DNA from: Stylophora pistillata
Taxonomy: Eukaryota
Reading direction: 5' to 3'
Length of the DNA: 64,000 nucleotides
Assembly (NCBI RefSeq): GCF_002571385.2
Contig: NW_019217786.1
Span: 75,961-139,960, forward strand
Position 1 is the first letter of the stretch; the number at the start of each line of letters is the position of its first letter. A model generated the notes under the pieces. That model was not told the DNA's origin. It saw only the letters and a program-made list of their open reading frames with translations, and ran no database searches. A program made the position numbers and the translations under genes. Positions 1-49,485 of the stretch are shown one piece after another.

Positions 1-267
1 TTTGTAATCGTTACGGTGGCCAATTTACCATTTCAACTTTGTTGATATATCCAAGTTACATAATTTGATAGGCCTCCCTGGTTGATGGCCGTTGTAATGT
101 TTTTCTGATTTTTTAACCAAGTTGGTAAAGTTGAGAAGTACTTATTTTCAGTAAAGAAACCTTAGCATAAGCTCCCCGTAAGATTAGTTTACGCGTTTGT
201 GCGTGACGTTTTAGTGTCAAAGCGAGTTGTACCAACTTTTCTTCAAACTCGTTCTTCACTTCACCAG

Positions 268-3200
268 AGAGTACCACTTGTGTCTTCCACGCAGAGAGGT
301 AGAAGAAGTGGACAATCTTCGCGATGAGTGGGTCAAATTGATGAATCTTGCCGAAAAAGTAAGGCGATGTAATCTAATACAGCACGATGCAGCATGAAAC
401 GGCCTCAAATATGATGGTTCTCTTTGTAAGGGTCAATTAACGCGGTGCAATTTTGTCTCATGCGACTCATTCATGTGACTTACAGTCTTTATCATTTAAC
501 ACTGAATGCGGCTACAACATGTTCATATCGCAAAGTGCTACGAAGTTTTCCCTGTATACATAACAAAATTATGTCTGTTGTTTATTGTCTCGAAGTATGC
601 TCGACAATATTTACTTCATCCGTGACTAGGACCACTTAGACAAGTCTTAAAATGTTGTTTGCACACCCTAGAATCTTGAGCCTTTCGTATGCCTTTCTTT
701 CATCCAAACCTCTCTGTAAACATTTATTTAAGATCTCTTTAATTTCTTCTCTTGATTTCGTTTTATGAAAAATGTACAGGTTAGAGACGAATTATTAGTA
801 CAAAAGCGTGGGATGTTTGAACAAGAACTGGACAAAGAAGTCAAGGTAAGAGCTGAAGTACCAAGAAGGATGCGAATCCCATGCGATGATTCAAACTTAG
901 TTTCAATTTCGCGACCTGATGGCCTTCGATTGTAGCCGCACAGAACTCGTTGGCGAGATAGGCCATATACCAGGTTCATGTGCGACAAGAGTCCTGCATT
1001 CTGGTAGGATAAGGCAAACTTGAAATATGAAATAAAATTCACTTGATGTTTTTTCTACCAGGCTTTTGTAGTGAATGTAATTCAGTTCCGGAATAGCTTT
1101 GACTCTCAAGGTCCAGGGGTGCCGGGTGTGAGACCAGCTGAAGCTGTGATAAGATTGCAAGACTTTCAACAACACTATACTCAGTTTGAAGCTAAACGAA
1201 AGACACTAGATTCTGTTCAAATGCTGTTTGGGATCGTTCCTGCACCTTTTGCAGAACTGGACAAAACAGGAGAGGTTGGTTATTACATTGATAACGCTAG
1301 GATATGGTGGTAGGCAGATCAGGTATTTACAAGTATACTTAAACTTTTGTCAATAAACAGTTGTTTCGCTTCGCTGCAGAAATTCTCTTTTTTAATGATG
1401 GCCTCTAATGAGACAAGTTATTCATTAATTTTGATAACGCAGTACATGTACATGTGAAACAGCTTTTAGTAGTTCTCTATGGTGTACACAGATTCGCGGA
1501 CATAGTGTTACCACACCTTTTCTCTTTTATAGGAACTCGAACTTCTTGGTTTACTGTACGGTCTGTTCCAGCAGTTCATTTCGTTTGATCAAAGGTTGGT
1601 AGACCTATGTTAGCTTGTTAACATTGATTTGCTAGCATTGAATAAAGTTGCACACACTTGTCTCTCTTAAAAAAGGTAAGCAATAGAAATAACGCAAAAC
1701 AAAGTTTAATTGCTAAGAATTTTATTGTCAAACTTTACCTAAAGTTGCTTCTGACAAACTGTGTTTGTTCAGGTTTAGGGATACCTTGTGGTCTGAGGTG
1801 GATCTGACTGTCGCAAATCAAGAGGTATAGTGATGATAAAAACGATTTATCTTTAATTTTTAATCTAATTTATTCGCCACGGGAATAGCAGGAGAAAGGA
1901 ACAGAACTTTCGTCCCAATTGACACCTAACCCCAATTCCCAGTAGACAGGCCAGACCACATCACAGTAATCTCGTGAGTGGATTCTTTAACGTCCCCTGC
2001 CTGACCAAATTAACTAATTAATAGATGCAGGAGACGGGACCTACGGTTTATTCGTCCTTATCCGAGAAGACTAGAATCTCTATCCATTTCTTGATATTAT
2101 AGAAAGGTAGCACATTCTCCTTAGTTATTTAAAGACCTTGAGTGATGGTCCGGCCGGGGCTCGAACCCTCGACCTCCCGCACAACAGTCCGGCGCTCTAA
2201 CCAATTGAGCTAACCGGGAGGCGGTTAACTAAATTACGACCGCAAATTCATGAAATGGAAAACTTGTGGATAATTTGGTTTGCTACTGCTCCTTTCCAGC
2301 AAATCCTTAAAAGACTGCCAACAGCTGTCGTGTATTCTTGCAAAAATGAAGCAGGCCTGGGCAGTCTTACGCCCGCCCTGTTTCATTATGGGAATATAGT
2401 AAACATGTATTCGTCCTACTCGTCCCAGAATCTACATAGCACCAATGACTTAAGTGTGCACCTAGTGATCCCTATTCAAATTGGAGACGAATGTCTTTCG
2501 AGAAAACAGAATTCCAACCTCAAATTTTACTTTAGATATCAGGGTCAGGCTAAGTTTTATCACCCCTTTGGCGTGCCAACGTTGTAGGTTATCCCGGTTT
2601 CTTTGACGTGGAGCGACCAGGGGCATTGTTTCTCCTCCTGGATTGGATGATACTCCATCCCCATTAGTTTGTCCAGTTTCCGTGATATTCCGTCGGTAGC
2701 CATTTTATACTCTCAGTTGGATGGAAAGAGGCACAATCAAAATATTTTCTTGACTAAGAAAATTATCCTGGACAAAGCTGGTTTCCAGGCCTTTAAATCT
2801 GGAGTCCAGCGCTAATCATTGGGCCATCGCATCTTTCGCATATACTGGTTATGTCTTATTTTAGTTTTGCTTCATTTGTTTGTAGATGGAGCATTACTGG
2901 CAGGAGTGCCTTCGTTTGCCTCAGAGGATACAAGAGTGGGATGCGTATAAAGAAATGAGAGACGCCATAAGACATTACCTTGATGTCTTCCCCACTTTGC
3001 ACAAGCTCAATTCAAAGGTATCTACTCGAACCGTTCGCGTCCACATTTTGTGCCTCCTGGATGGTCGAGGACTAAGAACGTTCTTCAGTATACGGATAAA
3101 TGTGTAGTCTCGGCTTCTTTTTCCTTTTTTTTTTTTTTTCAGGAGAGACTCCTTCTTTAATTTTTGATTAAATATTATACTTGGTCCACCACTGATACCA

Positions 3201-6200
3201 GAAATTACACATGGTAGACACATGGTTATTATAATTCTGAACGTCACCATGATGATCGTCATGAAAGTTGTAAAGCGAAACTTTAAGTTTGTTATTGTTT
3301 TTTTTTTTTAACACATTTAATTATCACTTTTGGTACGATAACCATCATGCTCCTACTAGACTTACCCTAGCCTTTTTTTTTTTTTTTTTTTTTTTGACAT
3401 TCCCTTGTCCTCTTGAGAAGCCAGTTATTATGCAGGTTTCCTTTGAAGTGATCTTACTCGCCACAAAACAGTTTTGAAAATATCATCTCATACGCCCCAC
3501 GCGTGTACGCTTCTGTTGTTCCTTTTGTAGGAGATTCGTAATCGCCATTGGCTACAGGTGATGAGTGTAACAGGATCGTCTTTCCAGCTCGAAGCGCACA
3601 TCTTTAAACTCGTTCACTTGTTGGATATTGGATTGCTTCAGTGAGTACAATTTTTTACTGACAGGCATGAATGTCGTTTGTGACAAGAGAAAATTGAATA
3701 GATAATTTTCTGGTCGGTCGCCCATTAAAGTGAGATGTCAAATTCAGTCACAATTCGAAGGTTTAAACCAGTTTGAATTGGTGCGACCGACAGCAGTGAA
3801 AAATGAAGCTGCGGTGACAAACATTTTCTCAACATCTTTTACGTCGCACACGGCGGATTCTCGTTGCGACTTGTTCCCGAACAAATTCAAAGCAGTCTAA
3901 ATAGCAGTGAGCGACAGAGTTTTCAAGTTATCAAGAATTTTTCATGTCACACGAACCGACTTGGCGTTGCGACTTTCTCCCACGAGGCGTCGCAGCAATC
4001 TGTTGGCAAGTGTTTATCGGTTTAATCCAAGTGTTTCTTTATCTTTGTGTAGACACCAGGCAGCAATCGAGGAAATATGCCGATGCGCTAGTAGAGAACT
4101 GGAGTTGGAAGCCAAAATGAGGAGTACTGAGGAGGAGTGGACGGAGCAGGTATTTTCATTTTGTACAACTTGTTTTGTAATCGGCTAAGGACTGCTGCTA
4201 TCGTGTGAAATCATTTACGTTGGCGAGACACAACTTATCGTCGCGTATTAATGTCTTTAGACCTCAATAACGGCGCTAGGTATCATTAAGGATCACTAGA
4301 AATTTGCAAATTGTGCAAATTGTGATGGCACAGCTCTTTTAGTGACGGTGGAAAATATTTACTTACGGCCTCTCTGTCCGCAGGTTCTCAGCTTTGAAAA
4401 TTTCAAGAACAGGGGCATGGTGTGTCTGAGCCACAGTAACACTGAACATCTGTTGGACCTGTTGGAGGATGCACAGGCCACTCTTGCACTGATGCTGACG
4501 TCACGCCACATCGGACCACTCCGTGATGAGGCAGCAGCATGGGCCATCAAGTTAAAAGAAATCAGCGAGGTCTTAGAGCAGGTACGTTATTTAAGTAATA
4601 CAGAGCGTGACTTTCTGAGCTTCTGATAACAACTGCAATTAGGACTCCGAAGTTGGTGATAATCCTTCGCTTTCTTTTTGCGCTGTAGTCTCTCGTGAGA
4701 TTTAAGGAATCAAATGAGACTCGGAAGTGAGAAAGTTAATAAACATGGACTGAGCGAGGATTGTTAATGATAGGGAACAGTCACACAGTTTTCAAAGCCG
4801 CTGTACTTCTAAGAATTCAGGGAAATTAATCTTTTTATTTCCTCACGGTGATTAACATCTAATTTCTCCATACAGTATCACTGCTGATCAAAACACCTAG
4901 GTCACTAGAATAAAGGAAATGATCACGACCTTAGAAGCTCTTGATTGTTAGGCAAATTCACTCTTGTCACTACCGAAAAAAGAAATGTATATTGAGCAGT
5001 AAGGAAAACACGAAAACTGATGTAAGGGACTAAAGGCTTATGAGTAAGACGGAGACACAAGATGGGCGGAATTGGAAAAGATTTGAGCGAACAGTGTTTG
5101 AGGAAACTTTATAAGCTCCCTCATGGCTTTTGCACTTCAAGGGTGAGGTGACGCACACAATTTTAATTTCTTTGTAGTGGTTGACTGTGCAAGATTTGTG
5201 GCAACATCTCGAGGAAGTCTTCAGCCATAGTGGAGCTGCTAAGGTAAGTGCCAGCCAAGTGCTAATTAAGCACGAGTTGATCACACATAACATACGTCTC
5301 CTTTATCTGTGTAGGACCTTCCACAAGAATATAATCGGTTTGCAAGGGTAGACAAGAGCTACATGAAGATGATGAAAAGAGCGTATGAAACAAGAAATGT
5401 TTTACAGGTATTGAAGCAAGCGAGTCACTTTACAGTTTTTACTTACCAGTCAGCAACAGTACGCCGTTTCCAAATACCATATTCCATCATTTGCATTTGT
5501 TCCAATCGACAATTACTTAGATATAAATAGACTATCAGTAGTTTCAGTTTTCAAACTTTTTCAAGCAATTTTCAGTTGAGTGTCGAGAGTAATCCGGGAA
5601 TGCAGTGGTTTGGATTTACTTCTCTCAGATATTAGTCAGGGAAATTCGTGCTGCTTTCTCAACTAATCAGATGTAAAACTAAAACTGACCGAGTCCTGGT
5701 CACTCGTGTTGTCACGCGATCTGGACAGTTTGCTTGTATTCAAAGAGCCATGTTCGTGAATAGAATAGCGAGGATTGTTAGTGAAGAAAATTGCGAATTC
5801 ACTGAGCCGGTAAGGTTTGATATTGTAGAATACGAGTTCAGCGTTAGGCCCTAAGTACACTATCTGTAAGCCTTACGTTATGTGGCTCATGTACTGCAGA
5901 CATCCTTAAGTCGCGTAGCTGTCGAAATTTCCTGAGACATCTTCTTTCATCTTTCTGCCTATTTCCGATGTTTCCATGACTTCTTTTAATGTCTAGTGCT
6001 GTGTTGGTGGCGATGTTCCAAAGAGTCAAATGTTAAAACATCTAGGTGAGGAGTTGGAGATCTGTTTTAAGTCACTTGTTGGATTCCTGGACTCCAAAAG
6101 AAAGGTAAACCGAAACTTGAAATGCTGCATTATGATGCGTCACGAAAAAAAAATCGTCTTGCTCGTAGTAATTGGCATGACTGTATGATGTTCATTTGTT

Positions 6201-9200
6201 CCTTGCAGGTTTTCCCTCGCTTCTGTTTTGTAAATGACCCAGTTTTACTAGCAATTCTAAGTCAGCCCTACAGTTTGGATTCTGTGCAACCATACTTCAG
6301 GTAGGATGGGACTTGAGTAATGTCTGGTAACTATTTTCCAGTTTGTCGTGAGTTTTTAGTTCTCTCTGAGTAATACTATTCTGTGCAAAACTTGTCCATC
6401 CTAAGCCATTCCTGTTGTCTTTTGGTTTATTTTTGCTTGTTGTTAGTTATAGGATTCAGAGGGAGGATGCCGTGGGCTAGGGTTCGCCCCCTCCATCCCT
6501 CCTTCATATCAAGCCCCTTTGGCTTTTTTACTGTTATCTAAAACAAAAAACTCGTCCGACGACAGAATCGCATATTTCTACTCAACTTGAAGTATAAGAA
6601 ATTTACTCACTAAAACATTTCATATCTTGTTTAAGCTCTGGTGTTTTTTAAAAAAGTTAGTTTTATGAATCAAAACTTTGACCCTCCCCATCAAAAAATT
6701 CCAGGCTGTACCTCTGCTTGTGGTGTTAATCCATTCCGGTAAACGTTTCTTCAAAGTTTCCCTCTGATTGTAAAAAGCTTTTGAGGACTGGGCAGCTCGT
6801 TTAAGGATTACATCCCTGTGTTTACTTTGTGTTTCAATTTCTTTGGATAGATGCATCTTTAACAGTGTGCGTAATGTGATGTTGACGCAACAAGAACCAG
6901 AAACAGTTGCTCAGAAGAAGAGCTCTGCCGTTGCTGCATGGCGGAGTAGGAGTGGGAGAGCGGATTCACTCTCGCCACTTCCTCACGCTAATACATTTGG
7001 GAGTCGTTTAAGGAAGATTTCTGACATTGTGGTCCAAGCTTCGAAAGAGGGAGAAGCGGGGGTACGGAAGTCAAGTTTTTTTCCCTCGACCCTTGATGTG
7101 CGAAACGTGGAACTCGACTGGCATAGTCATCTGCCCAAGAATATTGCTGTAGCTGTAACCTCGGAACAGGGAGAAACTCTGGAACTTATCACTAAGGTGA
7201 CATCTGTAACCAGAATGAAAAATAAATAGAAATCGCAACGGGCATGGTAGATTGATAGTTAGGATACAAGTTCAGTGACAGAGTGGATGTGTTACTCTAT
7301 ACCGCCTTGAAAATAATGCCAAAAATTAACTCGAAAGCCAGTTCAGATGCTACTCGACTGGTATCACCTCGACTGGTGGTTATCATGTCAGGGTTAAAGC
7401 TGGTTACATAAATACATGAAGTGGTGTCATCAGTTCACAATTGCAGTCATTAACAATGTCCTGTAAAACATCACAAAAGAGTGGTGAAGGTAGGGAGGGA
7501 CTGAGCGTGGAACCTTGTGGAACACCGGAAGTAACTCTGTTTAAGCTGAAACTACGGGAAGGAACACAGAATGAAATAAAGAATCAAACGCTTCTTTAAA
7601 GTCAAGTAAATTAGCGGAGATTACTCTATGTCAATTGCGGTTTACTTCGCACGATAGAACTACTTCCTATCTTTCTCTTCTTGCACCCTTATCTCGATTG
7701 TATGATAATATTCAAGCGCCTGAACTGAATTGTACCGTTGTCTCAGACTTTTTCTCATCTTTGATGATTACAGGTTCCTCTTGTCTCCAGTGTTGACGTG
7801 TGGTTGGCTGCATTGTTGAAGAGTATTAACGAATCTCTGCGATCCTCCATCGTGGATTGTATTCAGGATATTGACTCAGGGCACAGTCTAGAAGAGTGGA
7901 TTTTCAAGGTTTGTTTGGGCACAATTACCAATAGCTCAATATTTTACCCGATTGATGTACGGAAAATCGTACGAGGTTATGTCCTGCTGGATGCATGCTC
8001 AAGGAACATGACTAAGACGGCCTTTGCAGAATAAATAAGAGAAACTGAACCTCACTTTATCAACGATGCTCAACTGAAAAGGAGAAGAATTAGCCATATT
8101 TATTTAAGTAGTGCTCTTAAGTGCAGTTACCCGTAAGCTACACGCACTTCTTTTTTCGCTACATGAGACGAAAGGTTGTAATGCCTCATACTATGCATTC
8201 GACTTGGCTAACGGAGAAGGGGTGACTCCAATCGTATGGTGGCTGGTGCACCTTTCACATTATTGGGCATAATACTTTCTCGCAGTTAGCTTTCCCCTCG
8301 TGGCGTCTCAATTTCTCACATCACTTTTTGTTTCTAGTACCCTTCACAGACCTGTAGATTAGGATTACTTTACATCTGGACAAAGGAATGTGAGGCTGTA
8401 AGTGTCTACGTGTTGTTGTACGTGCCCACACTATATCAAGTACACTCCCTAAGGACATGAAATAGTCTTCGAATTATGTCTTTAGAGATACGCGGGGGTT
8501 ATTGACGATGATTGGCTTAAGTTCGGAGAGAATCTATCCTAGTGAATAAATCCATCCTATATAGGCCCCATTTCTAAAGTAATATTCTCCCGTTTTCGGA
8601 GATCCTAGGATAATCTAGAGGAATCCGATCCTTTTAGATGCGATTTGCTTACGCGGAAAGGGAGACAATCTAATCGAGTGGAGGATCTCAAGCTAAGGCG
8701 GTGTTTTCAGTTGTTTAAATTAATTGCTTAGCCTAAGTGTAATGTTGGGAAAAAAAAAAATTAAGTACTGCTCGTCAGTAGAATTGGGTCAGTTCTTATA
8801 CCTTAATCTAAAAAATTGAATAGCAGCTGTCCATGAATGGATCTCAGTTGATGGTTTGTTTTCGTGTCTTTATTTGTTAGGGGATCGGAGATATTCGTAT
8901 TGACCGCAAAGCAATGCCCAACGCTTCTCGTCGGTTTTGGTCACTCATCAGCAAGCTGCCGAACCTTCTGGCCAAAGGTTCTTGGAAACACACTGACTCT
9001 CCCATGACTTCCTATCATAAGTTGCGGCTGGAGACTCTTGTCTCGGTAACTAATTTCACGATCAATCTTTACATGCAATTTGGGTCGGATTTGTGTACTG
9101 GAATGCACAATGATCTAGTGTTTATACTTTGGGTGAAAATGCTATGCACCAGCATCCCATCCAGGAGTAGAAACAACAGCCCTAGTGGCAAAATGCAAGC

Positions 9201-9395
9201 CGCAATATGCTAATTAATAACTAGTCAAGGTGGGTATTAGAGTCAGTCCTTCATAAAAACTTCACTTTCCACAGCAAGGAATGTACTTGAGAGATATTCT
9301 CGAAGACCTCGGAAGGCGCAAGCTTAGAGATGTTGTGGATTTTGAATGGAAGAGAAATATCAGGTTCTATGGAACAGACAACAGCAGAGCACCTG
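268..9395 (+). CDS. Dynein heavy chain exons 1-18 in window: end of tail and linker (DHC_N2 region)
   Basis: Exons 268-358, 780-845, 1062-1274, 1533-1594, 1773-1824, 2886-3017, 3531-3640, 4053-4149, 4384-4581, 5178-5243, 5315-5407, 5997-6104, 6209-6300, 6851-7196, 7774-7908, 8338-8397, 8881-9045, 9275-9395. All are AG/GT-flanked and phase-compatible; motifs RHW, FPRF, DFEW. Confidence 0.9.
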
Positions 9396-12300
9396 GTAAG
9401 TAAATCTTTAGCCTATTATGCTGTTTAGAGAACTTTCAAATTCGCATAAAACGCTTCTGAAGCTCAAATTGATTTGTACAGACTGGAGAAAGTAAATAAA
9501 GTATTAAATTTATTACATAAAAAGAAGAAGAGCAAGAAACTGCCCACTCTCTGTAGTAGTTTTTCTTGTCTATTAAAAGGAATGTATACTAACCATGCAC
9601 TTGAATAAGACAAATTTCTGAAGAAAATAATGAAAAACAAATACTGTAGTAGCAGTAGCATTGATCGAATTGTTTGGGTGCATAACTGAACTTTAAGGAA
9701 ACCAGGAGATATAATCTCGGCATGAAGGGAAAAGACATAAGACTAAATAATAAACGGATCAAAAATAACGAACTTGGAAAAATTTGGCCGCACTTTTCAA
9801 GATGCTGTAAGATTGTTAATTATAAAATTGAACTACAACATATTCAGTCATTGACTATGTGTGACTCTTTAGGAAGGTCACCTTTACTTGGATCATTACC
9901 TTCACTGGAAGGAGCTGTTAGTCGTGCTCCCAGTTCGGAACCTCCCAAGATTACCGCTAGTGATAAGGAACACGAGGATCTCTATATACATATGTTGGAC
10001 GCTCAGCTACCTTATGGCTTTGAGTTCTACGGCTGTGAAGATTCTCTCGCCCTGACTCCCATAACAGAGAGATGCTTTCTGAGTTTGACACAGGTGATAC
10101 GATTTGTTGGTCGGTGGAACAGTGGTATTGTCAGTGAAATATTAGTGTTTTAGTTAGGGAGCAGAATGGAGATATCTTACGATGTTGTAATCTGGGGCTT
10201 TCCTTAGGGTCGAAAGGGAGTTGTTGATAGGGGCTTTTTGTGAGCCATGTGTACCTACCGAGTTATGAAAATAAATAAGAGAGGAATGGATATACGGGAA
10301 AGTAGCTTTATTTAAGCGTTTTCTTTTTTTTCTGATTATTTTAAGGCTGTTTGGAATGTCTTTGGGGGCTCTCTTGTTGGACCAACAGGGACAGGAAAAA
10401 CTGAGACAATAAAGGTAATTTTTGCTTGCAGTTCTTACTTTTCCTTCTTAATATTGCTCCTTCCCCTGCTTTTCTTCATTCCTTGCTCCATAAATGTACA
10501 ACTATATAGTCTAAATGCCCTTTTATTACTAGTATCAGGCGATCCTGAGGAACATCTGAAGAACCATTTGGAATGTCGTGGGAAAAATGGGGAAATTCGG
10601 CATTCTTTTTTTTTAGTATTTATCATTCAAACCTATTTTTGTTTCCATAGGGTCTAGCATCTTTGCTTGGTCGTTACCTGGTGTCACAGAGTTGTTCTCC
10701 AAAGATGTCTTCAGCAGCGATAGGAAAGATCATTTTAGGTCTGGCTGAGGTGAGAAATCTGTGAACTCTTGATTTCCTTTTTCTCTTTTTTGTTTCATTG
10801 TCTTGAAGAACTGAATCTTGCTGTCTTTGTAGGAAGGTTGCTGGGGTCTGATGGACGAGTTCCACAAAATAAACATGGAATGTCTTTCAGTTATGCTGTT
10901 TGAGATCCAAGCTGTACTACTCGCCTTGAGAGGTGGACTTTCCACTTGCACTTTGGAGGATGGAAAGGATGTATGTGATTTCAATATGAACTGCAATCCT
11001 AAAGATATTAGGGATACCTTTAAAGCCGGATACGCTGTGGCCTGACGAGCAACGGGCTGGATTCTAAATGGGGAAGTCTTGATTCAATCCCGGGCCTCGG
11101 TCATTCAGTTACAGGGCCTTCCCTCTCCCCTCCCCTCTCCTCCCCTCCCCAGTGTATTAATAAGTAACAACGAACTACCAGGAAAAGGTGATAAGTTGAT
11201 GTTAAGTAACCAGCATTCCTCAGTTCATATTTCTGGTCGCTCTGTGCCACAAAAACCGGGAAAAGTTTCGGCAGTAATGTTCATTAAGTGCTCAAGGGTC
11301 TTTCGCTCAGATGACTTCGAATGTGACAATAACAAACAAGTAGTACAGGGTCTCTAGTTGAAAATACATTGTAGTTCAAAGTTGAGGAGCTACTAAGGAA
11401 ATTTCTGAAGTGTTAACTTTTTTCAAGAGCTATCTATTGACAATTTTTTTATTTTTTTCTCTTCAATGATAGGTCACAGTTCAACCCAACTTCTCCATTT
11501 TCCTGACCATTTGTTCCAATGGACAAAACTTTGAATTCCCTCCTGAAGTCCGTGCTTTGTTTCGTTCTGTTGCCATGGTGATGCCAGACACGTCTCTGAT
11601 ACTCCGGGCTCACTGCGCAGGGCAGGGTTTTAAGTCACCCAAGATTTTATCTGATCGTCTGAAGCTTGTCGGGGATGTCTGTAAGGAGCAACTGTAAGTC
11701 ATCACATGTAAAATCCCTTCAATAAATGAGCTACCCCAGTTTAAGAGTGTTTCGAAGGAGATAGTCGATACAGCCATAGAGAATATTCCCAAATCTTAGG
11801 CAGTGTTTGTTTCAAGCTAAAGCAGACAATGTTATCGGGGAAGGAAACTGGAATTGGAAACTGAACTAACCAATCAGAGGATGCGTATTATGTTCATTTA
11901 TGTTTTAACGTAACATAAGCTACGAGAAATGAGAGCGTGATAATCAAAATAATTTCTAAAGAGGTATTTCAAATGTCTCTGCTCATCTTTCTTCGACAGG
12001 AGTGGAAAGAGTCACCACAACTTCAGTCTGTCTTCTTTTGTGGGCGTCATACAACATGCTGGAAAAAGGAAAAGCTCTCAAGGACCACTGGGAAGCAAAC
12101 TTAATGCTGCACAAGCTGATTTGGCGAGACCCTCCAGTACGCAGTCAATAGCCACACAATTTGGTAAGTAAAGCTGTTAGGTCGAGAACATTGATACGAG
12201 GACGTAGCTCACGGGAAAAGGGCCTATTGCAAACCTCACGAACGATTTGACACGAAACGCTGTTGCGCGTAGAGCGGATCATGTTGAAAAGTTCTTCACT

Positions 12301-15300
12301 CTCGCTCACAAAGTTTCGTAGCTGAATTGAAAACTTAGGGAGTATTGGTAAATTTTTTGGGTCAGTTAGGGTGTTCGTATGTCTTGTTTTTTGCGTTGTT
12401 TGTTTGGTTGTTTGTTTTTCAGTGTCGCGTCTTTTAATTAGATAATTGTATGCATCATTTTTCTCAGGAGCTGGAAAGGACAGAGGAAGCCAGTTTGGTC
12501 AGAAAGACAAGAAGCCTACTACCCCATCTGCTTTATCTTCTGCTGCCAGACTGGAGCATTCGTTCATTTTACAATCATTACAAGAGTGTATTGGCCCAAG
12601 ATTATCACCTGAGGTAACCACTGTCTTCTCATAAAGTGATAGCAGTTGAGGAAAACTTATTTTCTTGTTCTCTGTATTGTCTCTTGAAGTCGTTGTGAAG
12701 AGGGTATTAGAGGCAATTGGATATGATCGTATGACTTTCTCGCAGTAATTAGGACATTTCGGTAATCGTATTGGTTGCTAATTTAGCATTATCTTTCGAG
12801 TTTCGAAAGTAATCCGAGAATGCTCTAGATTTGCTTAACTTCGTTCAGTAATTGGTTGATACCACCGATATCAACGGAGTGATCTTATAGTATGGGGCAA
12901 TTGGTATTGCCAAAATAAGAATATTTCCTTGTATCATTTTCCTTCTTATTGTTTTACTTATTTTTCAACAAACCATTCAATTGAACCTTCTCTCTACCTT
13001 TAGGAACTGAACGTATTCAACATGGTTCTACGTGATGTTTTCTATGGTCTTCCCAAACCTCCTGCCCCAGCATTCCATATAACCAAAATTGTTCAAGATT
13101 TTGAAACTGTTCTCCTGGCGCACACACGCGAGAAAGGTTTTGTCGCTCATCAGCCCTGGATCGCAAAGATTCATCAGCTGTGGACTCTCTCCAAAGTTCA
13201 CCGAGGTGATTGATTCCTTAGAATTGTAGTTAGGTGGTCATTTTACTTACCTCACCAACAACATGTACCCATACATGCGAGAGCATTTACCTGTGTAAAC
13301 CGGAGCATCGGGGATTCGGCGATGGCAACAGCGCTCGGTTCACATCATTGAAGCAAGAATTCAGTTCCTCTACTTAGATTAAAAAATTAGTGGAGGTTAC
13401 TTGTGGGTCTCGTTTCTGCATCTTTGAAGGTTGTTTCGGGCTCCCGGGATTAACTCCTTCTACTATGAAGTAACATTAAAAATTTACTTGATCCGATGAA
13501 GTGCTCAGCTTTTCATCGATTTGACATTGGTAAAGACCAAGATTTATCATTACGAGCGACGCTTTGAAGTCAGACTAGGAAAGAACATATTTAAGCTTTT
13601 GCCTTCTATTATTCTTATACCTAAAGAAACATTTATGGTATTGCTTCTTAGGAATCATCGTCGCTGGGCCTCCAGGTACTGGCAAATCCTCCTGTATTTC
13701 AGGACTCGTGGAGACCCTCAGTGAATGTTCACTGGTAAAGCACAAGAACACAGGTTCACAGATGCACACGCATAAGTTACAGAGAATAAATCCATTGGCC
13801 GTATCCGATCCAGCTCTGATGTTTGGTAAAGTGAACACATCTTCTGATTTTGAGGATGGCATCTTCACTGCTTACTTCAGGAAGGCCAACAAAGACCATA
13901 GTGTACATAAGATGACCACTTGGCTGTGCTTAGACGCTCCTTTGCATCAAGGATGGGCTGAGTTTCTGAGCAGCGCATTGGATAAAGGAGAGGTGATGAC
14001 ATGTCTAGAAAACTTTTCTCACGCCTTAGAATACGACTTTGATGGGATCTAAAGCAGGGAGAGGGATGAGTAGATTTTGTCAGGACTGACAGACCATTAA
14101 TGAGACTCATTTTCCGTATAAAGTGTCTTCTTTAACCCTTTCACTCCCGAGATCTCATTAGTAACTCCCCCTCGCACACAAGCTGACCGCTGCAACCTGA
14201 CATTTATCGCAAATTCAAAGCTAATACAAGTAGCATACACTACGACCGGAAAATAACGAAAAAAGTTCCAGGCTAGTACATTATACTGGTATTGTATAAA
14301 CATTTAAAATCTTTGCGTGGGTGGGCGGGAAAGTCGGCAATGGCGGACGCATCAAAAACAACTGCCCGCCCCACAGGTCACATGACCTATACCCAGGCGC
14401 CAGCGGCGTGTGAGAAAAACATTTTTCACTTATTTTGTTCCGCTCAGCCAGTGAAAAGTCACCCTTACTGTCTGCCATTCAATTCTTATGATGTTAGTTT
14501 GCAGAGCTGGGTATTGGATCAGTTCATAATACCTTACTTGATATTTTTCTTTATTCTCGTCACTTGACTACTTGATATTGTATTGATGCATTGTGAGGAG
14601 AAGTTCTGTCTCGGTCACTCGTGCGAATTGTGAGGAGAAGTTCTGTCTCGGTCACTCGTGCGAATCAAAGGATGAACGATATCCCAACGATACACGCATA
14701 ATCTAATACCTCAAATAACAGTCATGAAGATCTTGGTGGATATAAAGTTATGTAGAAGGCACCAAACGGTACACTTCCATTCATTTAAGGATACATGGTC
14801 GGATTTGACCGTGCATATTTTTCACTCAGAAGAGAAGAAAAATTTTGCCTCTCCTCCCCGCAATTCCACGCACGTTTCTCTTAAGAGGCAATAGAAGGAA
14901 AATGAATTTCTGGAAACTTTGCCATACATTTTTTTTTCAGTAATGTAAGGTGATTTAAGATAGTTTCAAAAACTTTTGTTTTTCCATATGTTTGTCATTT
15001 CACTGTTGCTGTGGACAATATGTTTACCGCATAAAGGATTTTATGCATCTCACTATGCGTGAGGTCATTTGTGAAATCGTATAAGACGAGCTAATTGTTG
15101 TTGAAAGATATCGCATTATGTTGAGTTGCTATTAGCACGTCGAAAGATGGTATCTTCTGTCGAAAGTTATGCACTTTCAAAGTGGTAATGCTTGTGATTT
15201 TGTCTCCGTGTCTTTTTTTTTTTGTTTCAGTATCTGAACCTTTTGAACGGTGAAAGGCTGTATCTGTCAGAATATGTCAAACTGATTTTTGAGACAGATG

Positions 15301-15798
15301 ATCTAACAGACGCTTCACCTTCTACTGTCTCCAGATGTGTAAGTATATTTTTGTCTCAATTTTGCCTCTAGCTGTTGTGAGGAGTCAGTTTTAAATTCTT
15401 TAAACTACAGCTTCATTCTGTTAAAAAGAAGTTCTAAGTCGCCGCTTCCGTATCATTATTTGTGTGCTGTTAGCGTATATGATATATGTATAAGGGAAAT
15501 GAACGTGGTAGCTATAAAATGGTAGTGTAATGCCGGCTGGAATCGTAGTGTGAGATCACAATTGAGGTTGACTCACCAGGAAAAAGGATGTATGCTTGAT
15601 CATACGAGTATTAATGTTGATGCGATCACCATAAAAAAAGGATTGAAGCTGCGGTACCCATCATTTCCAATCACGATCTTCCTTAGAACACGTCTGATTA
15701 AGTCGTGTTGTTTAACTTTCAACGCCCTTCACTCAAATGAGCTTCCTTGAAGCAGCTCTTCACACAGTCATCACTGAACCGTGTCCTTGCTTACTCTG

Positions 15799-15856
<58 letters not shown>

Positions 15857-18800
15857 TTTATTTTCACTTTTCTTTGTGACCTCAGGGTATGGTGTACATG
15901 GATGAGACTGTACTGGGCTGGAGACCTTTGGCCGAAGCTTGGCTAGCAAACAGATCTCCCCAAGAAAGCCACGTATGTGTTCATGATCAACAAATGAAAA
16001 CAGAGCGTTTGTAAGATCGAGCGAACCTTGGAATTAGTGTAATTTGGGAATAATGGCGAAGAACTTTAAGCAATCCTAAAGCTAACACGTTGTGCCTTCC
16101 TCTCTCTTAGTGTTTACAAAGAGCATTCAACAAGACCGTTGATGTCATCTCGCAGTTTGTTCACTATGAAGCAAGGTAAGCTTTCGTTTAACCTTTTAAG
16201 TGGGTCAGCATCTATAACCCAGAGATAAGAGGAGAGAGGGGGAAGGGGTAGGGGTGGACTGGCTACTTACCAGGGAGGAGAAAGAATGATAATACCCGAC
16301 ACATGAATCTGTAATAGGACCGAACTGGAAACGAGGGACTCCAAACTTGAGGGGCCGGTATCTTGCCAAAATGTTTGTTTTTAACGATATCTCCCCAAGT
16401 CGCTCTGCTTCTTGGCACGTGATCAGAGTTCAACTGAGTTTGTTACGTTAATAACTGTACTCTTATTTTTGTTTCCTTTTTTAGACCATTCATGAAAGTT
16501 TGTGAGGTGGGGCTGTTTAACACGTGTCTCGCATTGTTAAAGGCTTTGATCGAGGTAAGTGTGACAGTTATGTACACTACTGTTTGTGTTCGTTTTTTCC
16601 ATTCAGCCAGAGTCATATAACGAAGATTTGAGTGTAACTTAATCGACTCGCCCTGCAGATTTATTGTAGTGAATGTCAAGAATGTCAAAAGTAATGCAAG
16701 TTTCTGTGTTTTTCGTTATGATCAGATGTTTCGATCTCACTTCATTTCAGGGAAACACTGACATTGGTGGCGAGCTTCATATTGACAGGTTGTACCTGTT
16801 CTCACTCATATGGTCATTTGGTGGACTTTTGGATGAAACAGACAGGAAGAAGTTCAGCGAACTGTTGCTGTCCCTGACAACGGCCTTGCCAGATTATGAT
16901 CAACAAATCTCCGTGTTTGATTATTATGTTGATGAATCTGGAGAGTGGGACCCGTGGCAGTCAAGGTGAGTTTCGTCGCGGTGATTTAGAGCAATTTTCA
17001 GTTGGATGTCGATATCAATACTTCATTGCATTGATTTTGCTTCATTATACTTTGTGATGGGTGTACAAAAACTCGTGCTACCCTCTCGAACAATTATTTT
17101 TGTAAATTTTAACCCAATTGTGAGCTACATACCCATTTTTTCGTCGCCAGAGGGCAAAGCAAATGTATTTACTCTTGCTTTTCTTTCGATAAAGAGTTCC
17201 AGAAGTAAGCTATTTCGATGCAGCAGATCTCCTTGGGGAGGTATTTGTGGACACAATTGACACAGTAAGTCTTCGTATCATAAAAATTAAGACATTCTTA
17301 ACTTAATTCATTTGATTGTAAGTTAACTTGCTTCTTAATTAACGTCATTATTCCTCTTCGATGAACAGACATCTTAGAATCCCTAATGCAATCCCAAAGT
17401 TGGAATGCATGAGCCAAATCAACAAAAGAAATGGACGACTTCCGCACAGAGGCTGTCATTCTTTAAGACCTGGTGTTTTTTTCTCCTTTAGATCCGTACA
17501 CGTCAGTTGATGGATTTGGCCTGCGCTTCTGGCAGAAACATTTTGCTGACCGGTCCTGCAGGATGTGGGAAAACATCCCTGATTGGCGACTTCCTCGACA
17601 AGCAAGGTGAGCGTCAAAAACAATCTATCATTACCAAATTTGGTAGTTCCCGCTTTGTTTGGCAGTGGATAACAAATGGATAAAAGAGTTACATTTTGAT
17701 TCGATTTTGTTTTCCAACGGTTTTTTCTATCCATTGCACTTTTCAGAGGATAAGAACCAAATTGTGAAACGCTACGTCTATTCAGGAACTTCGGGAGCTG
17801 CTTCATTACAACAGTTCATTGAACATAACATTTACCATAGGCAAGGTGAGTTGACCTCAGTTAGTGTTAGTATTCGAGTACGAAGTCCTTACGGCAACTT
17901 CAGGAGCCATGAAAATTAGCATTAATACATTCTCCTTATCTCCTTCGTCATTTAATGGGTGTCCTACCCATTTTTTTATCATAATTTGTTCCTTCTCCTC
18001 GTTTCTTTCCCATTTCTCCTTTCTCTGTTCACCGTACTCCTTCCCTTTAGAGACCCACGCAGGTTAGGCCGTTATCGTAGGGCGCCGTTTTAGGTTTTCC
18101 GGCCATTTTTCTCCCTACTCTGTATCATTTATTATTACACGACTCGGGCAGTCAGAGGGCCAATAACTAAAATCAACCAATCAAAATGCTCTATTGCCGG
18201 TCAATATTCTCTCAGTATTGGACCGGGCACTGTCCCGAATGGTCCCGAATGATACCGCACGTGTGTCCCTTTGAACTTCAGTCGTATAATAAATTTCTTA
18301 TTAACCAAGCTTGCTCGGGACCGTACTGAAAGAATATCGGCCCTCGGTCTTTTTTGAACGGACCTCGGGCCGATATTCTCCCAGTACGGCCCTCGCGCTT
18401 GGTTAATAAGATATATGTATTTTTTTCTTTCACGATTATTTCCTCTCTCATGTGCTGTTTCTCTCCCCTCTAAGATAGCTGCGCGACTGTGTTTTGGTTT
18501 TCAGAAGCGCAATGCCATCTGTTTCGTAAAAATTGTGCAACGGAGGTAAACAACTTTTTACAAAGAGCAGGAAAAGGCAATACAAAATCAATGTTCCATA
18601 AGTCCATAATTTGGGGACTTAGCTTTCCATTTTTTTATTTTCGACTTAGGGTTCGTGTATGGCGCTAAGAAAGGAAAAGTACTCAGCATGTTTATAGATG
18701 ATCTTAGCCTTCCTCAGCGGGATCAATATGGAACACAGGAAGTCAACGAAGTGAGTTAAACCTTCTATCTCTCTCTCTCCTCTTGCTCCGATCTTTGCGA

Positions 18801-21800
18801 CTGACGTGAACCAGGAGGTACCGGCGTGTGACATAAAAATTCTGCGGAATGTCGATTTTTTTGTGTTCGCTTACAAATTGTTGCGCTAGTGATAGATTAT
18901 ATTTCTGCAGAGAACTTATTTTTTGCGATTTTCTTTCTTAATAGGCTGACAGTTACAAAGAAAAAACGTTATATGTTCAAATTTTTAATAGTTCGAGAAG
19001 TATATGCGGAGCAGCTACATCTTGGATGCTTTTTATTTCTCGTGCAGATGTAAATTAAGGGATTCCATTTTGTTGCAGTTTATTTTGCCGGATTTTCTTT
19101 TCATTTGGATTTCTTTTGTAAGCGTGAAATTATTATTGCGGACAGAGGACTATCCAAAGAACCCGAGAACTTTCGATGCCACTCTGACCTGTCCTTTTTT
19201 TAATTAGCTGTTACGACAAGTACTCGACGAAAAAGTCCTGTTCAACACCAAGAAACCTTTTGACCGTCGTGTTTTAGAGGGAGTTGTTGTTACTGCAGCT
19301 ATGAACATGCAGTCAGAACTGGTGACCAGCCAGCAAATTCCTGAGAGACTTAAGGTGCGTATGATGATGATTTTACCGTCGGAAAGAAAATCTCAGGAAT
19401 AGGGAGAAAGGTTAATTTGGGAATATTAGTGTATTACTTCTTTTGCAAACCCTTTCTTTTCTTATCTTATCTCTAAATTAATCGTCATTCTTGAACCGTA
19501 GGCAGACTTATTTTATTCTAGTGATCTCTTATTTTCGTGTGTTAACGAACAGTAACTTGTCTTGCAGCGCCATTTTGCAGTTTTCCGATTACCAGCTCCG
19601 TCGGACGAGTCGCTCTTCACTATTGTTACCGCTATTTTAGAGGTGTGTGAAAATAGCCTTTGCTCTTTGTATCAACTTCGTCAAGAGCGTGGTAAAACAA
19701 AACTAAAGCTACTCTAGACTACTTTCAAGGCTCATCTGAAAACATTAATTTGTCAGTTTTTAATCTGCCAAGCAAATATGATTTTTCTTCCCTGTGGATT
19801 TCTTTTGGTGCGTTACCTTATTATAACGCGTACGTAACTCTCTTCGATTTTGTTGTACCTGTTTAGGCCAACATGGCTCAGAATCAAGGCATGGGTTTGC
19901 CACATGAGTTTCACGAGCAGATAGTGATGGCGTCGTGTATGCTGCTTAACAGTTTGCAGGGTGTACTGAGACCTTCTCCAACACCTGGAAGGTGTCATTA
20001 CCTGTTCAATCTCAGGGAAATAACCAGAGTGTTTCAGGTGCCGTAAATGCTCTGAAATTAATTGTAATTTAAACTAGACAAGTAGGGGTTGTTAGCTACT
20101 TGAGAAATGGATTCCACGTTGCCTCTGACCGGATATTGGAGAATTCTACGTCTAAACTTCAATGGCCTGAGCTTTTATTCAGACGTGGGCATTTCTGTTT
20201 TAAAAAGAATACGTTGAAATCGAGAGAAGCTTATGGGTAGGAGCGTAAATAGAAGTGCTATGGGATTTCCACGTGAGTAAAATTCCTCGCTTAGGTTTCG
20301 CTAATTCTAGATCTTCTTGAGATCTCCGAAAACGGCACTGATCGAAAAATAATTTTTAGATCATTTCGGAAGTAAGGCATTTGAGATCGTGTGTTTAGTT
20401 AGTCTCTTGATTCGACTCGCTTAAGTAAAAAGTTAAAATGGAAATTGAACAAACGTTGGTTGAAGATTTGCAGTTTGTGTATCGGAACATCGCAAAAGGA
20501 AAGTTCTTCATTAGTAATTTACTGGCAAGCAGGCACGCGATGAGAAAACCATTTACATTATCAAATTTGAGATGTCTTTGTTTAACTGCAAATTCTCATC
20601 AACAACCAACAAAGAAATGTATCGTCACTAGTTTGGAAAATTTGCTTTGAAATCCTGGGAGTGAAAGGGTAGAAGTAGGGTAGAAATGCAAGTAGACTTG
20701 CATTTTCTTTGTTGTAATTACTGGATGTTTTGATTTCAGGGGTTAAACAATTGTTCAGAGGAGATGCAGGCTGATGAGGAATACGTGGTATCCCTGTGGC
20801 AGCATGAACTAACAAGAGTGGTTAAGGACCGTATATGCCGATCAATAGATATTAAATGGTTCGAGAAAACCCTTAAAACAATTATTAAAGAGGTACAACT
20901 GCGAAAAAAAGTTGCTTTAATGAACCTAGTAGTTTGTCATAGTTTGTCATGTAAAGAACAGATCACCTAATTCTTTTTGTTTCGCTTCAGAACTTTCCAG
21001 AGCTTCCTGCCAATTCTCCTTCTCCTCTGTTTATTACTTTTCCTCTGGATGCTGGACTTTACGCTCAGCGCCCTGTGACCCAGGGACGCGTTGCACCGAA
21101 GGTTTGTTGTCGCGCCTTTAGAAAAGATTAAAAAGAAATGGAAAGAACGAAATTACAATACGTTTAGTACTATGAATTGAGCGCAGCAGTAGCCCTCTAG
21201 ACGAACCACACCAGGTAGAGAGGAATTTGAGACCTAAAGTGAGTCGTGGGTTAAAATTCACAAACCTCACTGCAGATCTCTTGATGCTCTTCCGAAAGAA
21301 CTATGGAGACAAAATAGGGAGACTTTTTTATGAATATCATTAAACATTTCGAAACGTTTTTGTTTCAATTGATAATATCAACACTTTCTTTTCTCGCCAT
21401 TTGCAATGTTATGGCCCAGTGAAAATGTTTGGCAAATAAACCTTAATTAAAGTAATGTTCAGCACCATTTTCCCGTGTGGATTTGGCGATAAATATTCGA
21501 CTTCTTATTGTGTTTGTTATTACAGCTCCTTCTTCAAGCCATAAATAACATTGAAGACGTGTCCCCTTGTTTGCAAAGCTATCTGAAGCGTTACAATGAC
21601 GAGTTTAGCGGGGAAGGACTGGATTTAATGATCTCATCTCATGTCATGTTTCATGTTGTTCGTCTGCACAGAATCTTAAGTTACAAGAACAGGTAAACAG
21701 CTGATGGACTGAATCATATCGAAATTTTTTACTTTGAATTATTTTGATAGTTCTGGTCGAGCGAGTTAAAAGCCACTGTATTTTGGACAGGGGAAGATGG

Positions 21801-31875: not shown

Positions 31876-31911
<36 letters not shown>

Positions 31912-32305
31912 GTAATTATCAATCTCATCTAAATTTTTGATGATTTTTTCGCGTAGCCTGAAATACATGGAGCGCGAGTGGAAAGCATATGTTGACGAGT
32001 ATACTTCATCTGAAATTCTGCTGTCTAACTGTATCGCTGGAGCAGCTTTTCTAACTTACTGTGGAGCAATGGGAGTCGACAGGAGGTAATGAAATCAGTC
32101 GATCTTGAGCTCACAGACTCGAGGAATCGCCTATGGCGATTTACTGAACTGAAGTGGACTTTAAAATAGACTAATTGTAATTATTTGCGCGACAACCCTC
32201 GGCCTCCTTTAACCCTCCAACCCCTGAGAGTGACTACCATTTAATTTCTCCTTACAATATCATCCCTGAATGGTAATAATAATAGTAATAATAATATAAC
32301 AATTA

Positions 32306-32349
<44 letters not shown>

Positions 32350-49259: not shown

Positions 49260-49485
49260 TTAGTCCTGCCCAGGTCGCCTTCCGATCCCCTCCAATGGGT
49301 TCCTAACGGCCGACGAAAGCGAGGCTTCCCCCAAGAATCTTGGAGGAGAACCGTAGAAAGAGAAATGAGGGACAGAGCTTGGACATGGGAGCAGCTTGAC
49401 CGACTGGCAACTGACAGAAATCAATGGTGTTCTGTGGCCGAAGCCTTATGTGCATGGACGCACGAAGAGTCCTAACTTACTAACC
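49260..49485 (+). mobile_element. 5'-truncated RTE-clade LINE 3' end with 11-bp TSD
   Basis: Encodes LQWVPNGRRKRG/..ESWRRTVEREMRDRAWTWEQLDRLATDRNQWCSVAEALC, an RTE C-terminal signature, with a short (CTAA/CTTA) tail. TSD aaacagaagca at 49249-49259 and 49486-49496. Confidence 0.85.

What the first reader, a model, noticed from the sequence alone, without database searches (positions are those of the whole stretch)
11497..12033. AAA1 sensor-I Asn and sensor-II Arg both missing
The canonical FITMNPGYAGRxELP reads FLTICSNGQNFEFP (11500-11541). The canonical LSxQxHYDFGLR reads LSGKSHHNFSLS (12001-12033). Flanking anchors (ALFRSVAMVMPD, GF, KEQLS) fix the alignment. In AAA+ proteins these residues contact the gamma-phosphate and couple hydrolysis, so losing both predicts little or no hydrolysis at the primary site.
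Basis: partly seen in the sequence, partly recalled or inferred. Interest (0 to 1): 0.8.

Follow-up and report, generated by a model that had tools for sequence, protein, structure and literature searches.

The report
Coral DNAHX dynein with degenerate AAA1

Summary
In the AAA1 module of a multi-exon dynein heavy-chain gene (+ strand, about 266-48555), a Cys codon (11512-11514) sits where the sensor-I Asn should be. A Ser codon (12031-12033) sits where the sensor-II Arg should be. Walker A (GPTGTGKT), Walker B (DE) and the AAA2 arginine finger are intact.

Spliced polyA RNA contigs from three studies join exactly these exons (11473-11693 to 12000-12162/3). No alternative exon in the window encodes the canonical motifs.

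The gene is not a one-off. It belongs to a strongly supported clade with Lytechinus variegatus XP_041462850. That protein is DNAHX, the non-motile dynein heavy chain of Chai et al. (bioRxiv 10.1101/2025.01.18.633724). The window also shares DNAHX's characteristic insertions.

- The sensor-II Arg is absent in 29 of 29 DNAHX-like proteins, which fits one loss on the family stem.
- The sensor-I Asn was lost at least five times, including in all cnidarians sampled.
- The gene is under purifying selection: dN/dS is 0.12 overall and 0.08 in both sensor exons.

Most likely AAA1 binds ATP but hydrolyses it poorly or not at all, as cryo-EM showed for the sea-urchin protein. I class this as a new member of a known kind. 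The scan's other notes on this window (AAA4 P-loop, stalk and MTBD inserts) describe the same gene.

The parts
266..48555 (+). C-terminal ~3,900 codons (linker, AAA1-AAA6, stalk/MTBD, C-terminal domain) of a DNAHX-type dynein heavy-chain gene in more than 55 exons. The 5' part lies upstream of the window.
   Evidence: tblastn is colinear with Dimorphilus P0085 residues 1407-5326 and the whole of amphioxus P0004. tblastn HSPs are 84.6% identical to coral cDNA protein P0122. Pfam hits are DHC_N2, AAA_6, AAA_7, AAA_8 and Dynein_C.
10344..10412 (+). AAA1 Walker A exon (GGSLVGPTGTGKTETI). The P-loop is canonical.
   Evidence: Exon bounds from RNA contigs; translation; alignment.
10649..10747 (+). 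AAA1 exon between Walker A and Walker B.
   Evidence: RNA joints 10412>10649 and 10747>10831, both GT..AG.
10831..10970 (+). AAA1 Walker B exon (GCWGLMDEFHK). Asp-Glu is intact.
   Evidence: The exon is 100% identical in protein to the related coral, with dN 0 and dS 0.28.
11473..11693 (+). AAA1 sensor-I exon.
   Evidence: PDB and Pfam alignments. RNA joints 10970>11473 and 11693>12000. dN/dS 0.084.
11512..11514 (+). TGT Cys codon at the sensor-I Asn position (Dictyostelium N2078, yeast N1899).
12000..12163 (+). AAA1 small-domain exon holding the sensor-II position and the start of a ~52-residue low-complexity insertion shared by DNAHX proteins.
   Evidence: RNA contigs (the end is ambiguous, 12162 or 12163). 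Alignment. Insertion map after Danio DNAH5 residue 2215. dN/dS 0.080.
12031..12033 (+). TCT Ser codon at the sensor-II Arg position (Dictyostelium R2150, yeast R1971).
12467..12614 (+). Next exon, which continues the AAA1 small-domain insertion.
   Evidence: RNA joint 12162>12467.
15333..15335 (+). AGA Arg codon in AAA2 (SPSTVSRC). It aligns to the arginine finger that completes the AAA1 site (Dictyostelium R2410) and is retained.
25142..25447 (+). Exon carrying two adjacent DNAHX-specific insertions, in the region I take to be the AAA4 small domain. They are candidates for the PS2i insert of the paper.
   Evidence: Insertions after Danio DNAH5 residues 3194 and 3202 are shared by sea urchin, starfish, corals, anemone, limpet and frog. 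The same letters appear in the window ORF 25070-25450.
28207..28497 (+). MTBD exon with a long disordered insertion before H3, a DNAHX hallmark.
   Evidence: Insertion after Danio DNAH5 residue 3368, 41-60 residues in all DNAHX rows. Window ORF 28189-28539. Paper section on stalk-MTBD insertions.

Best explanation
The window encodes the motor part of the stony-coral orthologue of DNAHX. DNAHX is a dynein heavy-chain subfamily that arose by duplication of the outer-arm DNAH5/8-type chain early in animal evolution and became a non-motile, structural or regulatory dynein.

In this orthologue the AAA1 pocket keeps every element needed to bind ATP-Mg: a canonical Walker A, Walker B Asp-Glu and the AAA2 arginine finger. 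It lacks the sensor-I Asn (now Cys, in a loop one residue shorter and without the Pro/Tyr 'backdoor' residues) and the sensor-II Arg (now Ser).

Shown here: the residue states, the splicing, the expression, the orthology and the purifying selection.

Inferred: AAA1 binds ATP but hydrolyses it very slowly or not at all. The motor is therefore held in one, pre-powerstroke-like state, as cryo-EM showed for the sea-urchin protein. It would then act as a partner or template for other dynein chains rather than as a motor.

The loss of the sensor-II Arg is a family-wide ancestral event. The loss of the sensor-I Asn is a later, independent step in the cnidarian lineage.
For: Identity:
- A word search with amphioxus P0004 returns a block of ~5,200-5,300-residue 'DNAH5/8-like' proteins from cnidarians, molluscs, annelids, echinoderms, hemichordates, tunicates, non-teleost fishes and amphibians.
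- Near-full-length members of this block score 2,200-3,350 bits. Canonical DNAH5/8 score 976 bits or less.
- The block includes P0111, L. variegatus, 5,272 residues. Its V2221, S2322/T2324 and K2393 match the residues published for DNAHX.
- In the tree, 25 DNAHX-like rows form one clade (support 100) that is sister to the branch holding the canonical DNAH5/8 rows. Corals and Nematostella lie inside it.
- The window's tblastn HSPs are 84.6%, 77% and 68% identical to coral P0122, Montipora P0121 and Nematostella P0124.
- Insertions at the same eight or more positions are shared with sea-urchin DNAHX, and the window encodes them.

AAA1 state:
- The sensor-II Arg is absent in 29/29 DNAHX-like rows and present in 7/7 canonical rows, which needs one change on the tree.
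- The sensor-I Asn is absent in 16/29 rows, including 5/5 cnidarians, which needs at least 5 changes.
- The nearby Asn of SNG is not conserved among anthozoans; that column reads N, H, T or D.
- The Arg finger is retained.

A real, functional gene:
- Spliced RNA contigs from three polyA studies have 0-1 differences from the window and GT..AG introns.
- dN/dS is 0.116 over 3,461 codons against a related coral cDNA.

Mechanism: native sea-urchin DNAHX holds ATP at AAA1 and is seen only in the pre-powerstroke state.
Against: - No ATPase measurement or structure exists for any cnidarian DNAHX.
- The coral site differs from the sea-urchin one. It has a canonical P-loop where the urchin has Val. It has Ser rather than Lys at sensor II. 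It has lost the Asn that the urchin keeps.
- Walker A, Walker B and the Arg finger are all intact, and the Walker B exon shows dN = 0. That would be unexpected if nucleotide chemistry no longer mattered.
- By general knowledge (not tested here), classic-clade AAA proteins hydrolyse ATP without a sensor-II Arg, and some AAA+ domains use Thr or Ser at sensor I.
- The window lacks the 5' third of the gene, so full length and tail features were not checked.
- The tree is FastTree only, with few non-DNAH5/8 outgroups.
Confidence: 0.78

Rival explanations
1. It is the same gene (coral DNAHX), but AAA1 is not dead. It is a slow or regulated ATPase, or an ATP sensor, that works with non-canonical sensor residues. 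The conserved replacement motif around sensor II (HHxFS[LIV]) would serve a new role.
For: - Walker A, Walker B Glu and the AAA2 Arg finger are canonical in all five cnidarians and the window.
- The AAA1 exons are under strong purifying selection, with omega between 0 and 0.22.
- An HH-x-F-S-L-like motif recurs at the sensor-II place from molluscs to vertebrates.
- AAA proteins without a sensor-II Arg can hydrolyse ATP (general knowledge, not tested here).
Against: - Sea-urchin DNAHX, which keeps more of the canonical site, still holds unhydrolysed ATP.
- Other lineages have gone on to lose the Walker B Glu, with at least 4 changes on the tree. Hydrolysis is therefore dispensable for the family's function.
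- The sensor-I loop is variable among anthozoans.
Confidence: 0.17
2. The gene is a decaying paralogue or pseudogene of an outer-arm dynein, and the missing residues are neutral damage.
For: - Several catalytic motifs are degenerate: the AAA1 sensors and the AAA4 P-loop.
- The coding region carries many low-complexity insertions.
Against: - No stop codon appeared in any of the HSPs that align the exons to orthologues along about 3,900 residues of P0085.
- Correctly spliced polyA RNA is found in three studies.
- dN/dS is 0.116 with dS 0.37.
- Orthologues are kept from sponge to amphibians, and the gene tree mirrors the species tree.
Confidence: 0.02
3. The gene is an orthologue of DNHD1, the other divergent 'orphan' dynein heavy chain with a degenerate AAA1. 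This was my first guess.
For: DNHD1 also has a poorly conserved AAA1 and disordered insertions.
Against: - The gene lies in a clade with XP_041462850 (DNAHX) next to DNAH5/8.
- DNHD1 is reported to lack the Walker B catalytic residues and to share no specific sequence homology with DNAHX. The window has Asp-Glu.
- No DNHD1-named protein is among the 120 listed hits of the 227 found.
- I did not retrieve a DNHD1 sequence for a direct comparison.
Confidence: 0.02
4. It is an artefact of exon choice: an alternative or missed exon supplies canonical sensor motifs.
For: None found.
Against: - Six-frame motif scans of the whole window found no such exon.
- RNA contigs of three studies join 10970>11473, 11693>12000 and 12162>12467 with nothing in between.
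- The cDNA-derived proteins P0122 and P0123 of related corals carry the same non-canonical residues.
Confidence: 0.01

Closest known systems
DNAHX (Lytechinus variegatus XP_041462850; Chai et al., bioRxiv 10.1101/2025.01.18.633724)
   Same: - Orthologous clade.
- Sensor-II Arg lost, and the sensor-I loop lacks the conserved Pro and Tyr.
- Walker B is present.
- Insertions are shared in the linker, AAA1 small domain, AAA4 small domain, both stalk helices, MTBD pre-H3 and H5, and the C-terminal domain.
- The host is an aquatic animal that sheds sperm into water.
   Different: - The coral has a canonical P-loop (GTGKT), where the urchin has GVGKT.
- The coral has lost the sensor-I Asn (Cys), which the urchin keeps.
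- Sensor II is Ser in the coral and Lys in the urchin.
- The sensor-I loop is one residue shorter in the coral.
- There is no structural or biochemical data for the coral protein.
Canonical outer-arm dynein heavy chains DNAH5/DNAH8 (OAD alpha/gamma type)
   Same: - They are the closest canonical family in the tree, in PDB hits to individual exons and in the word search.
- The domain order is the same.
- Walker A, Walker B and the Arg finger of the AAA1 site are identical in kind.
   Different: - Canonical chains have TMNPGYAGR and HYDFGLR (7/7).
- They have a Pfam MT stalk domain hit (PF12777), which none of the listed DNAHX rows has.
- They lack the insertions listed.
- They are only about 24-28% identical to DNAHX proteins.
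DNHD1 (orphan dynein heavy chain of mammals)
   Same: It works like DNAHX in outline: a dynein heavy chain with a degenerate AAA1 and disordered insertions, proposed to be non-motile and needed for flagellum assembly.
   Different: It is reported to lack the Walker B catalytic residues and to be unrelated to DNAHX within the dynein tree. The window gene keeps Walker B and is a DNAHX orthologue.
Degenerate AAA5/AAA6 sites of all dyneins
   Same: These are AAA+ modules kept as structural elements after losing catalytic motifs (general knowledge of dynein architecture, for example PMC4047620).
   Different: AAA5 and AAA6 have lost the P-loop and do not bind nucleotide. Here the P-loop, Walker B and Arg finger remain, so nucleotide binding is expected.

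Membership tests
DNAHX subfamily of dynein heavy chains | Forms a clade with XP_041462850 that is separate from canonical DNAH5/8. | tested here: met
   P0111 is identified as XP_041462850 by length and by residues V2221, S2322, T2324 and K2393. The clade of 25 rows has support 100 and includes the corals. There is a score gap between 2,200-3,350 bits and 976 bits or less. The window's tblastn HSPs are 84.6% identical to coral member P0122. The window itself was placed exon by exon, not as a joined sequence.
DNAHX subfamily of dynein heavy chains | Unusually long protein (about 5,200-5,300 residues, against about 4,500). | tested here: inconclusive
   The window holds only the last ~3,900 codons. 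The nearest full-length orthologues are 5,240-5,243 residues (Montipora P0121, P0123). The insertions that make the protein long are present in the window.
DNAHX subfamily of dynein heavy chains | Insertions in stalk CC1 and CC2 and disordered insertions in the MTBD (pre-H3 and H5). | tested here: met
   Insertions lie after Danio DNAH5 residues 3293, 3368, 3424 and 3488 in sea urchin, starfish, corals, anemone, limpet and frog. The matching letters appear in window ORFs at 26197-26553, 27270-27467, 28189-28539, 28563-28991 and 30696-31001. Published description.
DNAHX subfamily of dynein heavy chains | Pre-sensor-II insertion in the AAA4 small domain. | tested here: inconclusive
   Two shared insertions lie after Danio residues 3194 and 3202 and are encoded at window 25142-25447. 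I did not model the fold, so I could not confirm that they are the beta-hairpin plus helix PS2i of the paper.
DNAHX subfamily of dynein heavy chains | AAA1 catalytic motifs depart from those of all canonical dyneins. | tested here: met
   Sensor I is Cys and sensor II is Ser. Family-wide table.
DNAHX subfamily of dynein heavy chains | AAA1 holds ATP and the motor is locked pre-powerstroke; it forms a heterodimeric 'dynein-X' in sperm. | not testable with these tools
   This is known only for the sea-urchin protein. It needs biochemistry or cryo-EM.
Catalytically competent dynein AAA1 site | Walker A GxxGxGK[ST] and Walker B Asp-Glu. | tested here: met
   GPTGTGKT and DE.
Catalytically competent dynein AAA1 site | Sensor-I Asn (yeast N1899, Dictyostelium N2078). 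| tested here: not met
   Cys at 11512-11514.
Catalytically competent dynein AAA1 site | Sensor-II Arg (yeast R1971, Dictyostelium R2150). | tested here: not met
   Ser at 12031-12033. There is no Arg within the following 11 residues.
Catalytically competent dynein AAA1 site | Arginine finger from AAA2 (yeast R2209, Dictyostelium R2410). | tested here: met
   Arg at 15333-15335 in SPSTVSRC. It aligns without gaps to 3VKG chain index 1047, which is R2410.
DNHD1 | AAA1 lacks the catalytic Walker B residues, and the lineage is separate from DNAHX. | tested here: not met
   Walker B Asp-Glu is present, and the gene groups with DNAHX. No DNHD1 sequence was compared directly.

The most novel reading that the evidence does not exclude
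Anthozoan DNAHX may be an intermediate stage in the making of a pseudo-motor. Its AAA1 keeps a fully canonical P-loop, Walker B and Arg finger under strong purifying selection, but has swapped both sensors. It might therefore still turn over ATP slowly, or read the ATP level, as a timer or switch for assembling and releasing partner dyneins, rather than being permanently locked as in sea urchin.
Probability: 0.17. Interest if true: 0.55.

Novelty: new member of a known kind. Interest (0 to 1): 0.3.

Why it matters
This gene shows that the published idea of a non-motile dynein subfamily extends to reef-building corals.

It also adds an evolutionary order of events. The sensor-II arginine was lost once, at the origin of the family. 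The sensor-I asparagine and the Walker B glutamate were then lost repeatedly in separate lineages.

Cnidarians keep the most complete nucleotide-binding pocket. That makes coral or anemone DNAHX a good subject for asking what an ATP-bound but non-cycling dynein head does in sperm flagellum assembly.

For the scan, it means that several separate notes on this window describe one known gene family, not several anomalies. Those notes cover the AAA1 sensors, the AAA4 P-loop, the stalk inserts and the MTBD inserts.

Tried and rejected
- **DNHD1 orthologue.** This was my first reading, at 60%. I rejected it after the cluster names, the word search and the tree.
- **Pfam on the sensor-II exon alone.** It gave no family. 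The alignment there rests on the multiple alignment and on contiguous numbering from the sensor-I exon.
- **PDB.** No DNAHX chain is in the copy searched. All hits are canonical dyneins at E 1e-8 or weaker, and the preprint lists its PDB codes as XXXX.
- **Alternative exons.** None were found.
- **Structure prediction.** I did not run it. The tools return confidence and secondary structure but no coordinates, so they cannot say whether the Asn of SNG reaches the gamma-phosphate. I argued from its lack of conservation instead.
- **Joined spliced protein.** Exons were searched by reference. The cDNA-derived protein P0122 (locus L001) of a related coral stood in wherever a contiguous sequence was needed.
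- **Big representative search.** I used it once. A 74-residue exon cannot reach full-length dyneins through the length-limited word search.
- **N letters.** The two single N letters at 41763 and 62270 were left untouched.
Full report
**What is in the sequence**

The window (40% G+C) carries a long multi-exon gene on the + strand, from about 266 to 48555. Stop-to-stop reading frames and Pfam scans identify dynein heavy-chain pieces in the canonical order. These are DHC_N2 (linker), AAA_6 (AAA1), AAA_7, AAA_8 and Dynein_C.

At the reported coordinates, 11500-11541 reads FLTICSNGQNFEFP and 12001-12033 reads SGKSHHNFSLS. The exon borders are canonical. An AG acceptor precedes 11473 and a GTAAGT donor starts at 11694. 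A CAG acceptor ends at 11999 and a GTAAGT donor starts at 12164. The Leu before SGKS is a split codon.

**Is the alignment right?**

- Phmmer of exon 11473-11694 against all PDB chains hits only dyneins. The best is human DYNC1H1 at E 1e-8. The Cys sits opposite the Asn of TMNPGY, and the loop has a one-residue gap.
- Pfam AAA_6 matches the exon at E 2e-11.
- Published residue numbers give an independent check. In the Dictyostelium chain 3VKG the Cys maps to index 715. The Arg of the AAA2 motif STVSRC maps to index 1047. Their spacing of 332 equals N2078 to R2410.
- The Ser at 12031-12033 falls at index 787, which is R2150.
- These three residues are the sensor I, sensor II and arginine finger listed in Table 3 of PMC8304172.

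So the sensor-I Asn is replaced by Cys and the sensor-II Arg by Ser. Walker A (GPTGTGKT), Walker B (Asp-Glu) and the arginine finger are intact.

**Alternative exons and expression**

A six-frame scan of the whole window for NPGY, GYAGR and HYDFGLR-type motifs found nothing usable.

Runs labelled as coral hold the stretch. Contigs from three polyA RNA-seq studies lie on it with 0-1 differences. They define these exons, all with GT..AG introns and nothing in between:

- 10344-10412
- 10649-10747
- 10831-10970
- 11473-11693
- 12000-12162
- 12467-12614

The gene is therefore transcribed and spliced as read.

**What gene is it?**

My first guess was DNHD1. The evidence pointed elsewhere.

- A search of 1.8 billion representative proteins with the sensor-I exon found close fragments at 93%, 86% and 66% identity. 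It also found long proteins from amphioxus, bichirs, frogs, a caecilian, an annelid and a sponge. All have non-canonical AAA1 motifs.
- A word search with the amphioxus protein gave a block of about 5,200-5,300-residue proteins annotated 'DNAH5/8-like'. They come from cnidarians, molluscs, annelids, echinoderms, hemichordates, tunicates, non-teleost fishes and amphibians.
- Near-full-length members of that block score 2,200-3,350 bits. They are sharply separated from canonical DNAH5/8, which score 976 bits or less at 24-28% identity.
- One member, P0111 of Lytechinus variegatus, has 5,272 residues. It carries V2221, S2322, T2324 and K2393. These are exactly the residues that Chai et al. describe for DNAHX, XP_041462850.
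- In a FastTree of 36 full-length proteins, the 25 DNAHX-like rows form one clade (support 100). The clade is sister to the branch holding the canonical DNAH5/8 rows. Its internal order follows the animal tree: sponge, then cnidarians with one unlabelled eukprot row, then bilaterians.
- The window's tblastn HSPs are 84.6% identical to the coral cDNA protein P0122, 77% to Montipora and 68% to Nematostella. All three lie inside that clade.
- DNAHX-specific insertions occur at the same places in sea urchin, starfish, corals, anemone, limpet and frog. The places are the linker, the AAA1 small domain just after sensor II, the AAA4 small domain, CC1, MTBD pre-H3, MTBD H5, CC2 and the C-terminal domain.
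- The window encodes these insertions, in line with the paper's description.

The same genome (398 Mb) also has at least ten loci with a canonical MNPGYAGR coding motif. The reversed control pattern finds none. This gene is therefore an extra paralogue, not the coral's only outer-arm chain.

**The AAA1 columns across the family**

| Feature | DNAHX-like rows | Canonical rows | Minimum changes on the tree |
|---|---|---|---|
| Sensor-II Arg present | 0 of 29 | 7 of 7 | 1 |
| Sensor-I Asn present | 13 of 29 | 7 of 7 | 5 |
| Walker B Glu | lost in several lineages | 7 of 7 | 4 |

- The sensor-I Asn is kept in ambulacrarians, amphioxus, a tunicate, several molluscs and one annelid.
- It is lost in all five cnidarians, all vertebrates, the sponge and others.
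- Cnidarians keep the most complete pocket.
- No Arg lies near the sensor-II place.
- At that place many lineages share an HH-x-F-S-L-like motif.

**Is it decaying?**

No. Against the cDNA of a related coral (locus L001), dN/dS is 0.116 over 3,461 codons, with dS 0.37. It is 0.084 in the sensor-I exon and 0.080 in the sensor-II exon. The Walker B exon has no amino-acid change at all.

**How it most likely works**

Sensor I and Walker B position the attacking water. The sensor-II Arg of the small domain and the neighbour's Arg finger contact the gamma-phosphate (PMC4047620).

With Walker A, Walker B and the Arg finger present but both sensors gone, the expected behaviour is ATP binding with very slow or no hydrolysis. 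For the sea-urchin orthologue this has been seen directly. Native DNAHX holds ATP at AAA1 and occurs only in the pre-powerstroke state. It is proposed to act as a non-motile partner ('dynein-X', phi-particle template) during sperm flagellum assembly.

Applying this to the coral protein is inference by orthology. I put about 0.78 on it and about 0.17 on residual, functionally used turnover.

**Comparison and novelty**

However, the trait is a published property of the DNAHX subfamily. The preprint's text names sponges, placozoans, fish, gastropods, frogs and sea urchin, but not corals or other cnidarians.

What is added here:

- a coral member of the family;
- its particular variant of the site;
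- the order of losses, with sensor II first and once, and sensor I and Walker B later and repeatedly.

That order fits the authors' suggestion that an AAA1 change was the initial event.

**Limits**

Exons were used by reference, and a related coral's cDNA protein served as proxy.
- No 3D model was made, because the tools give no coordinates.
- The 5' third of the gene lies outside the window.

Noticed in passing
window 22338-22520: The AAA4 P-loop is degenerate: GSIGTHLNS where canonical dyneins have a GxxGxGK-type P-loop. The Dimorphilus DNAHX orthologue has the similar GPIGTHLST. This is probably another family trait of DNAHX rather than a peculiarity of this gene.
   Followed up: partly
window 12066: RNA contigs from different studies read C or T where the window has A. 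The site lies inside the low-complexity AAA1 small-domain insertion and is likely a polymorphism. A second difference, T>C at 12520, appears in one study.
   Followed up: no
window 50385-51428 (- strand): A 348-codon uninterrupted reading frame lies just downstream of the dynein gene on the opposite strand. Its hydrophobic segments make it look like an intronless seven-transmembrane receptor.
   Followed up: no
window 49251-49472 (+ strand): This short reading frame resembles the C-terminal tail often seen in non-LTR retrotransposon ORF2 proteins of invertebrates. That resemblance is from memory only. It is probably a repeat fragment between the two genes.
   Followed up: no
window 26837-27152 and 31001-31353: Introns within the stalk region contain tandem simple repeats that translate as runs of Cys-Leu-Ser-Val in several frames. 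They are not part of the coding sequence as judged from orthologue alignments.
   Followed up: no
window 63524-63790 (+ strand): This reading frame has an ankyrin-repeat-like segment near the end of the window. It may be the first exon of a neighbouring gene.
   Followed up: no
G000, ten contigs listed: At least ten other loci in the same 398-Mb genome encode the canonical MNPGYAGR sensor-I motif. They are presumably the coral's canonical dynein heavy chains.
   Followed up: partly
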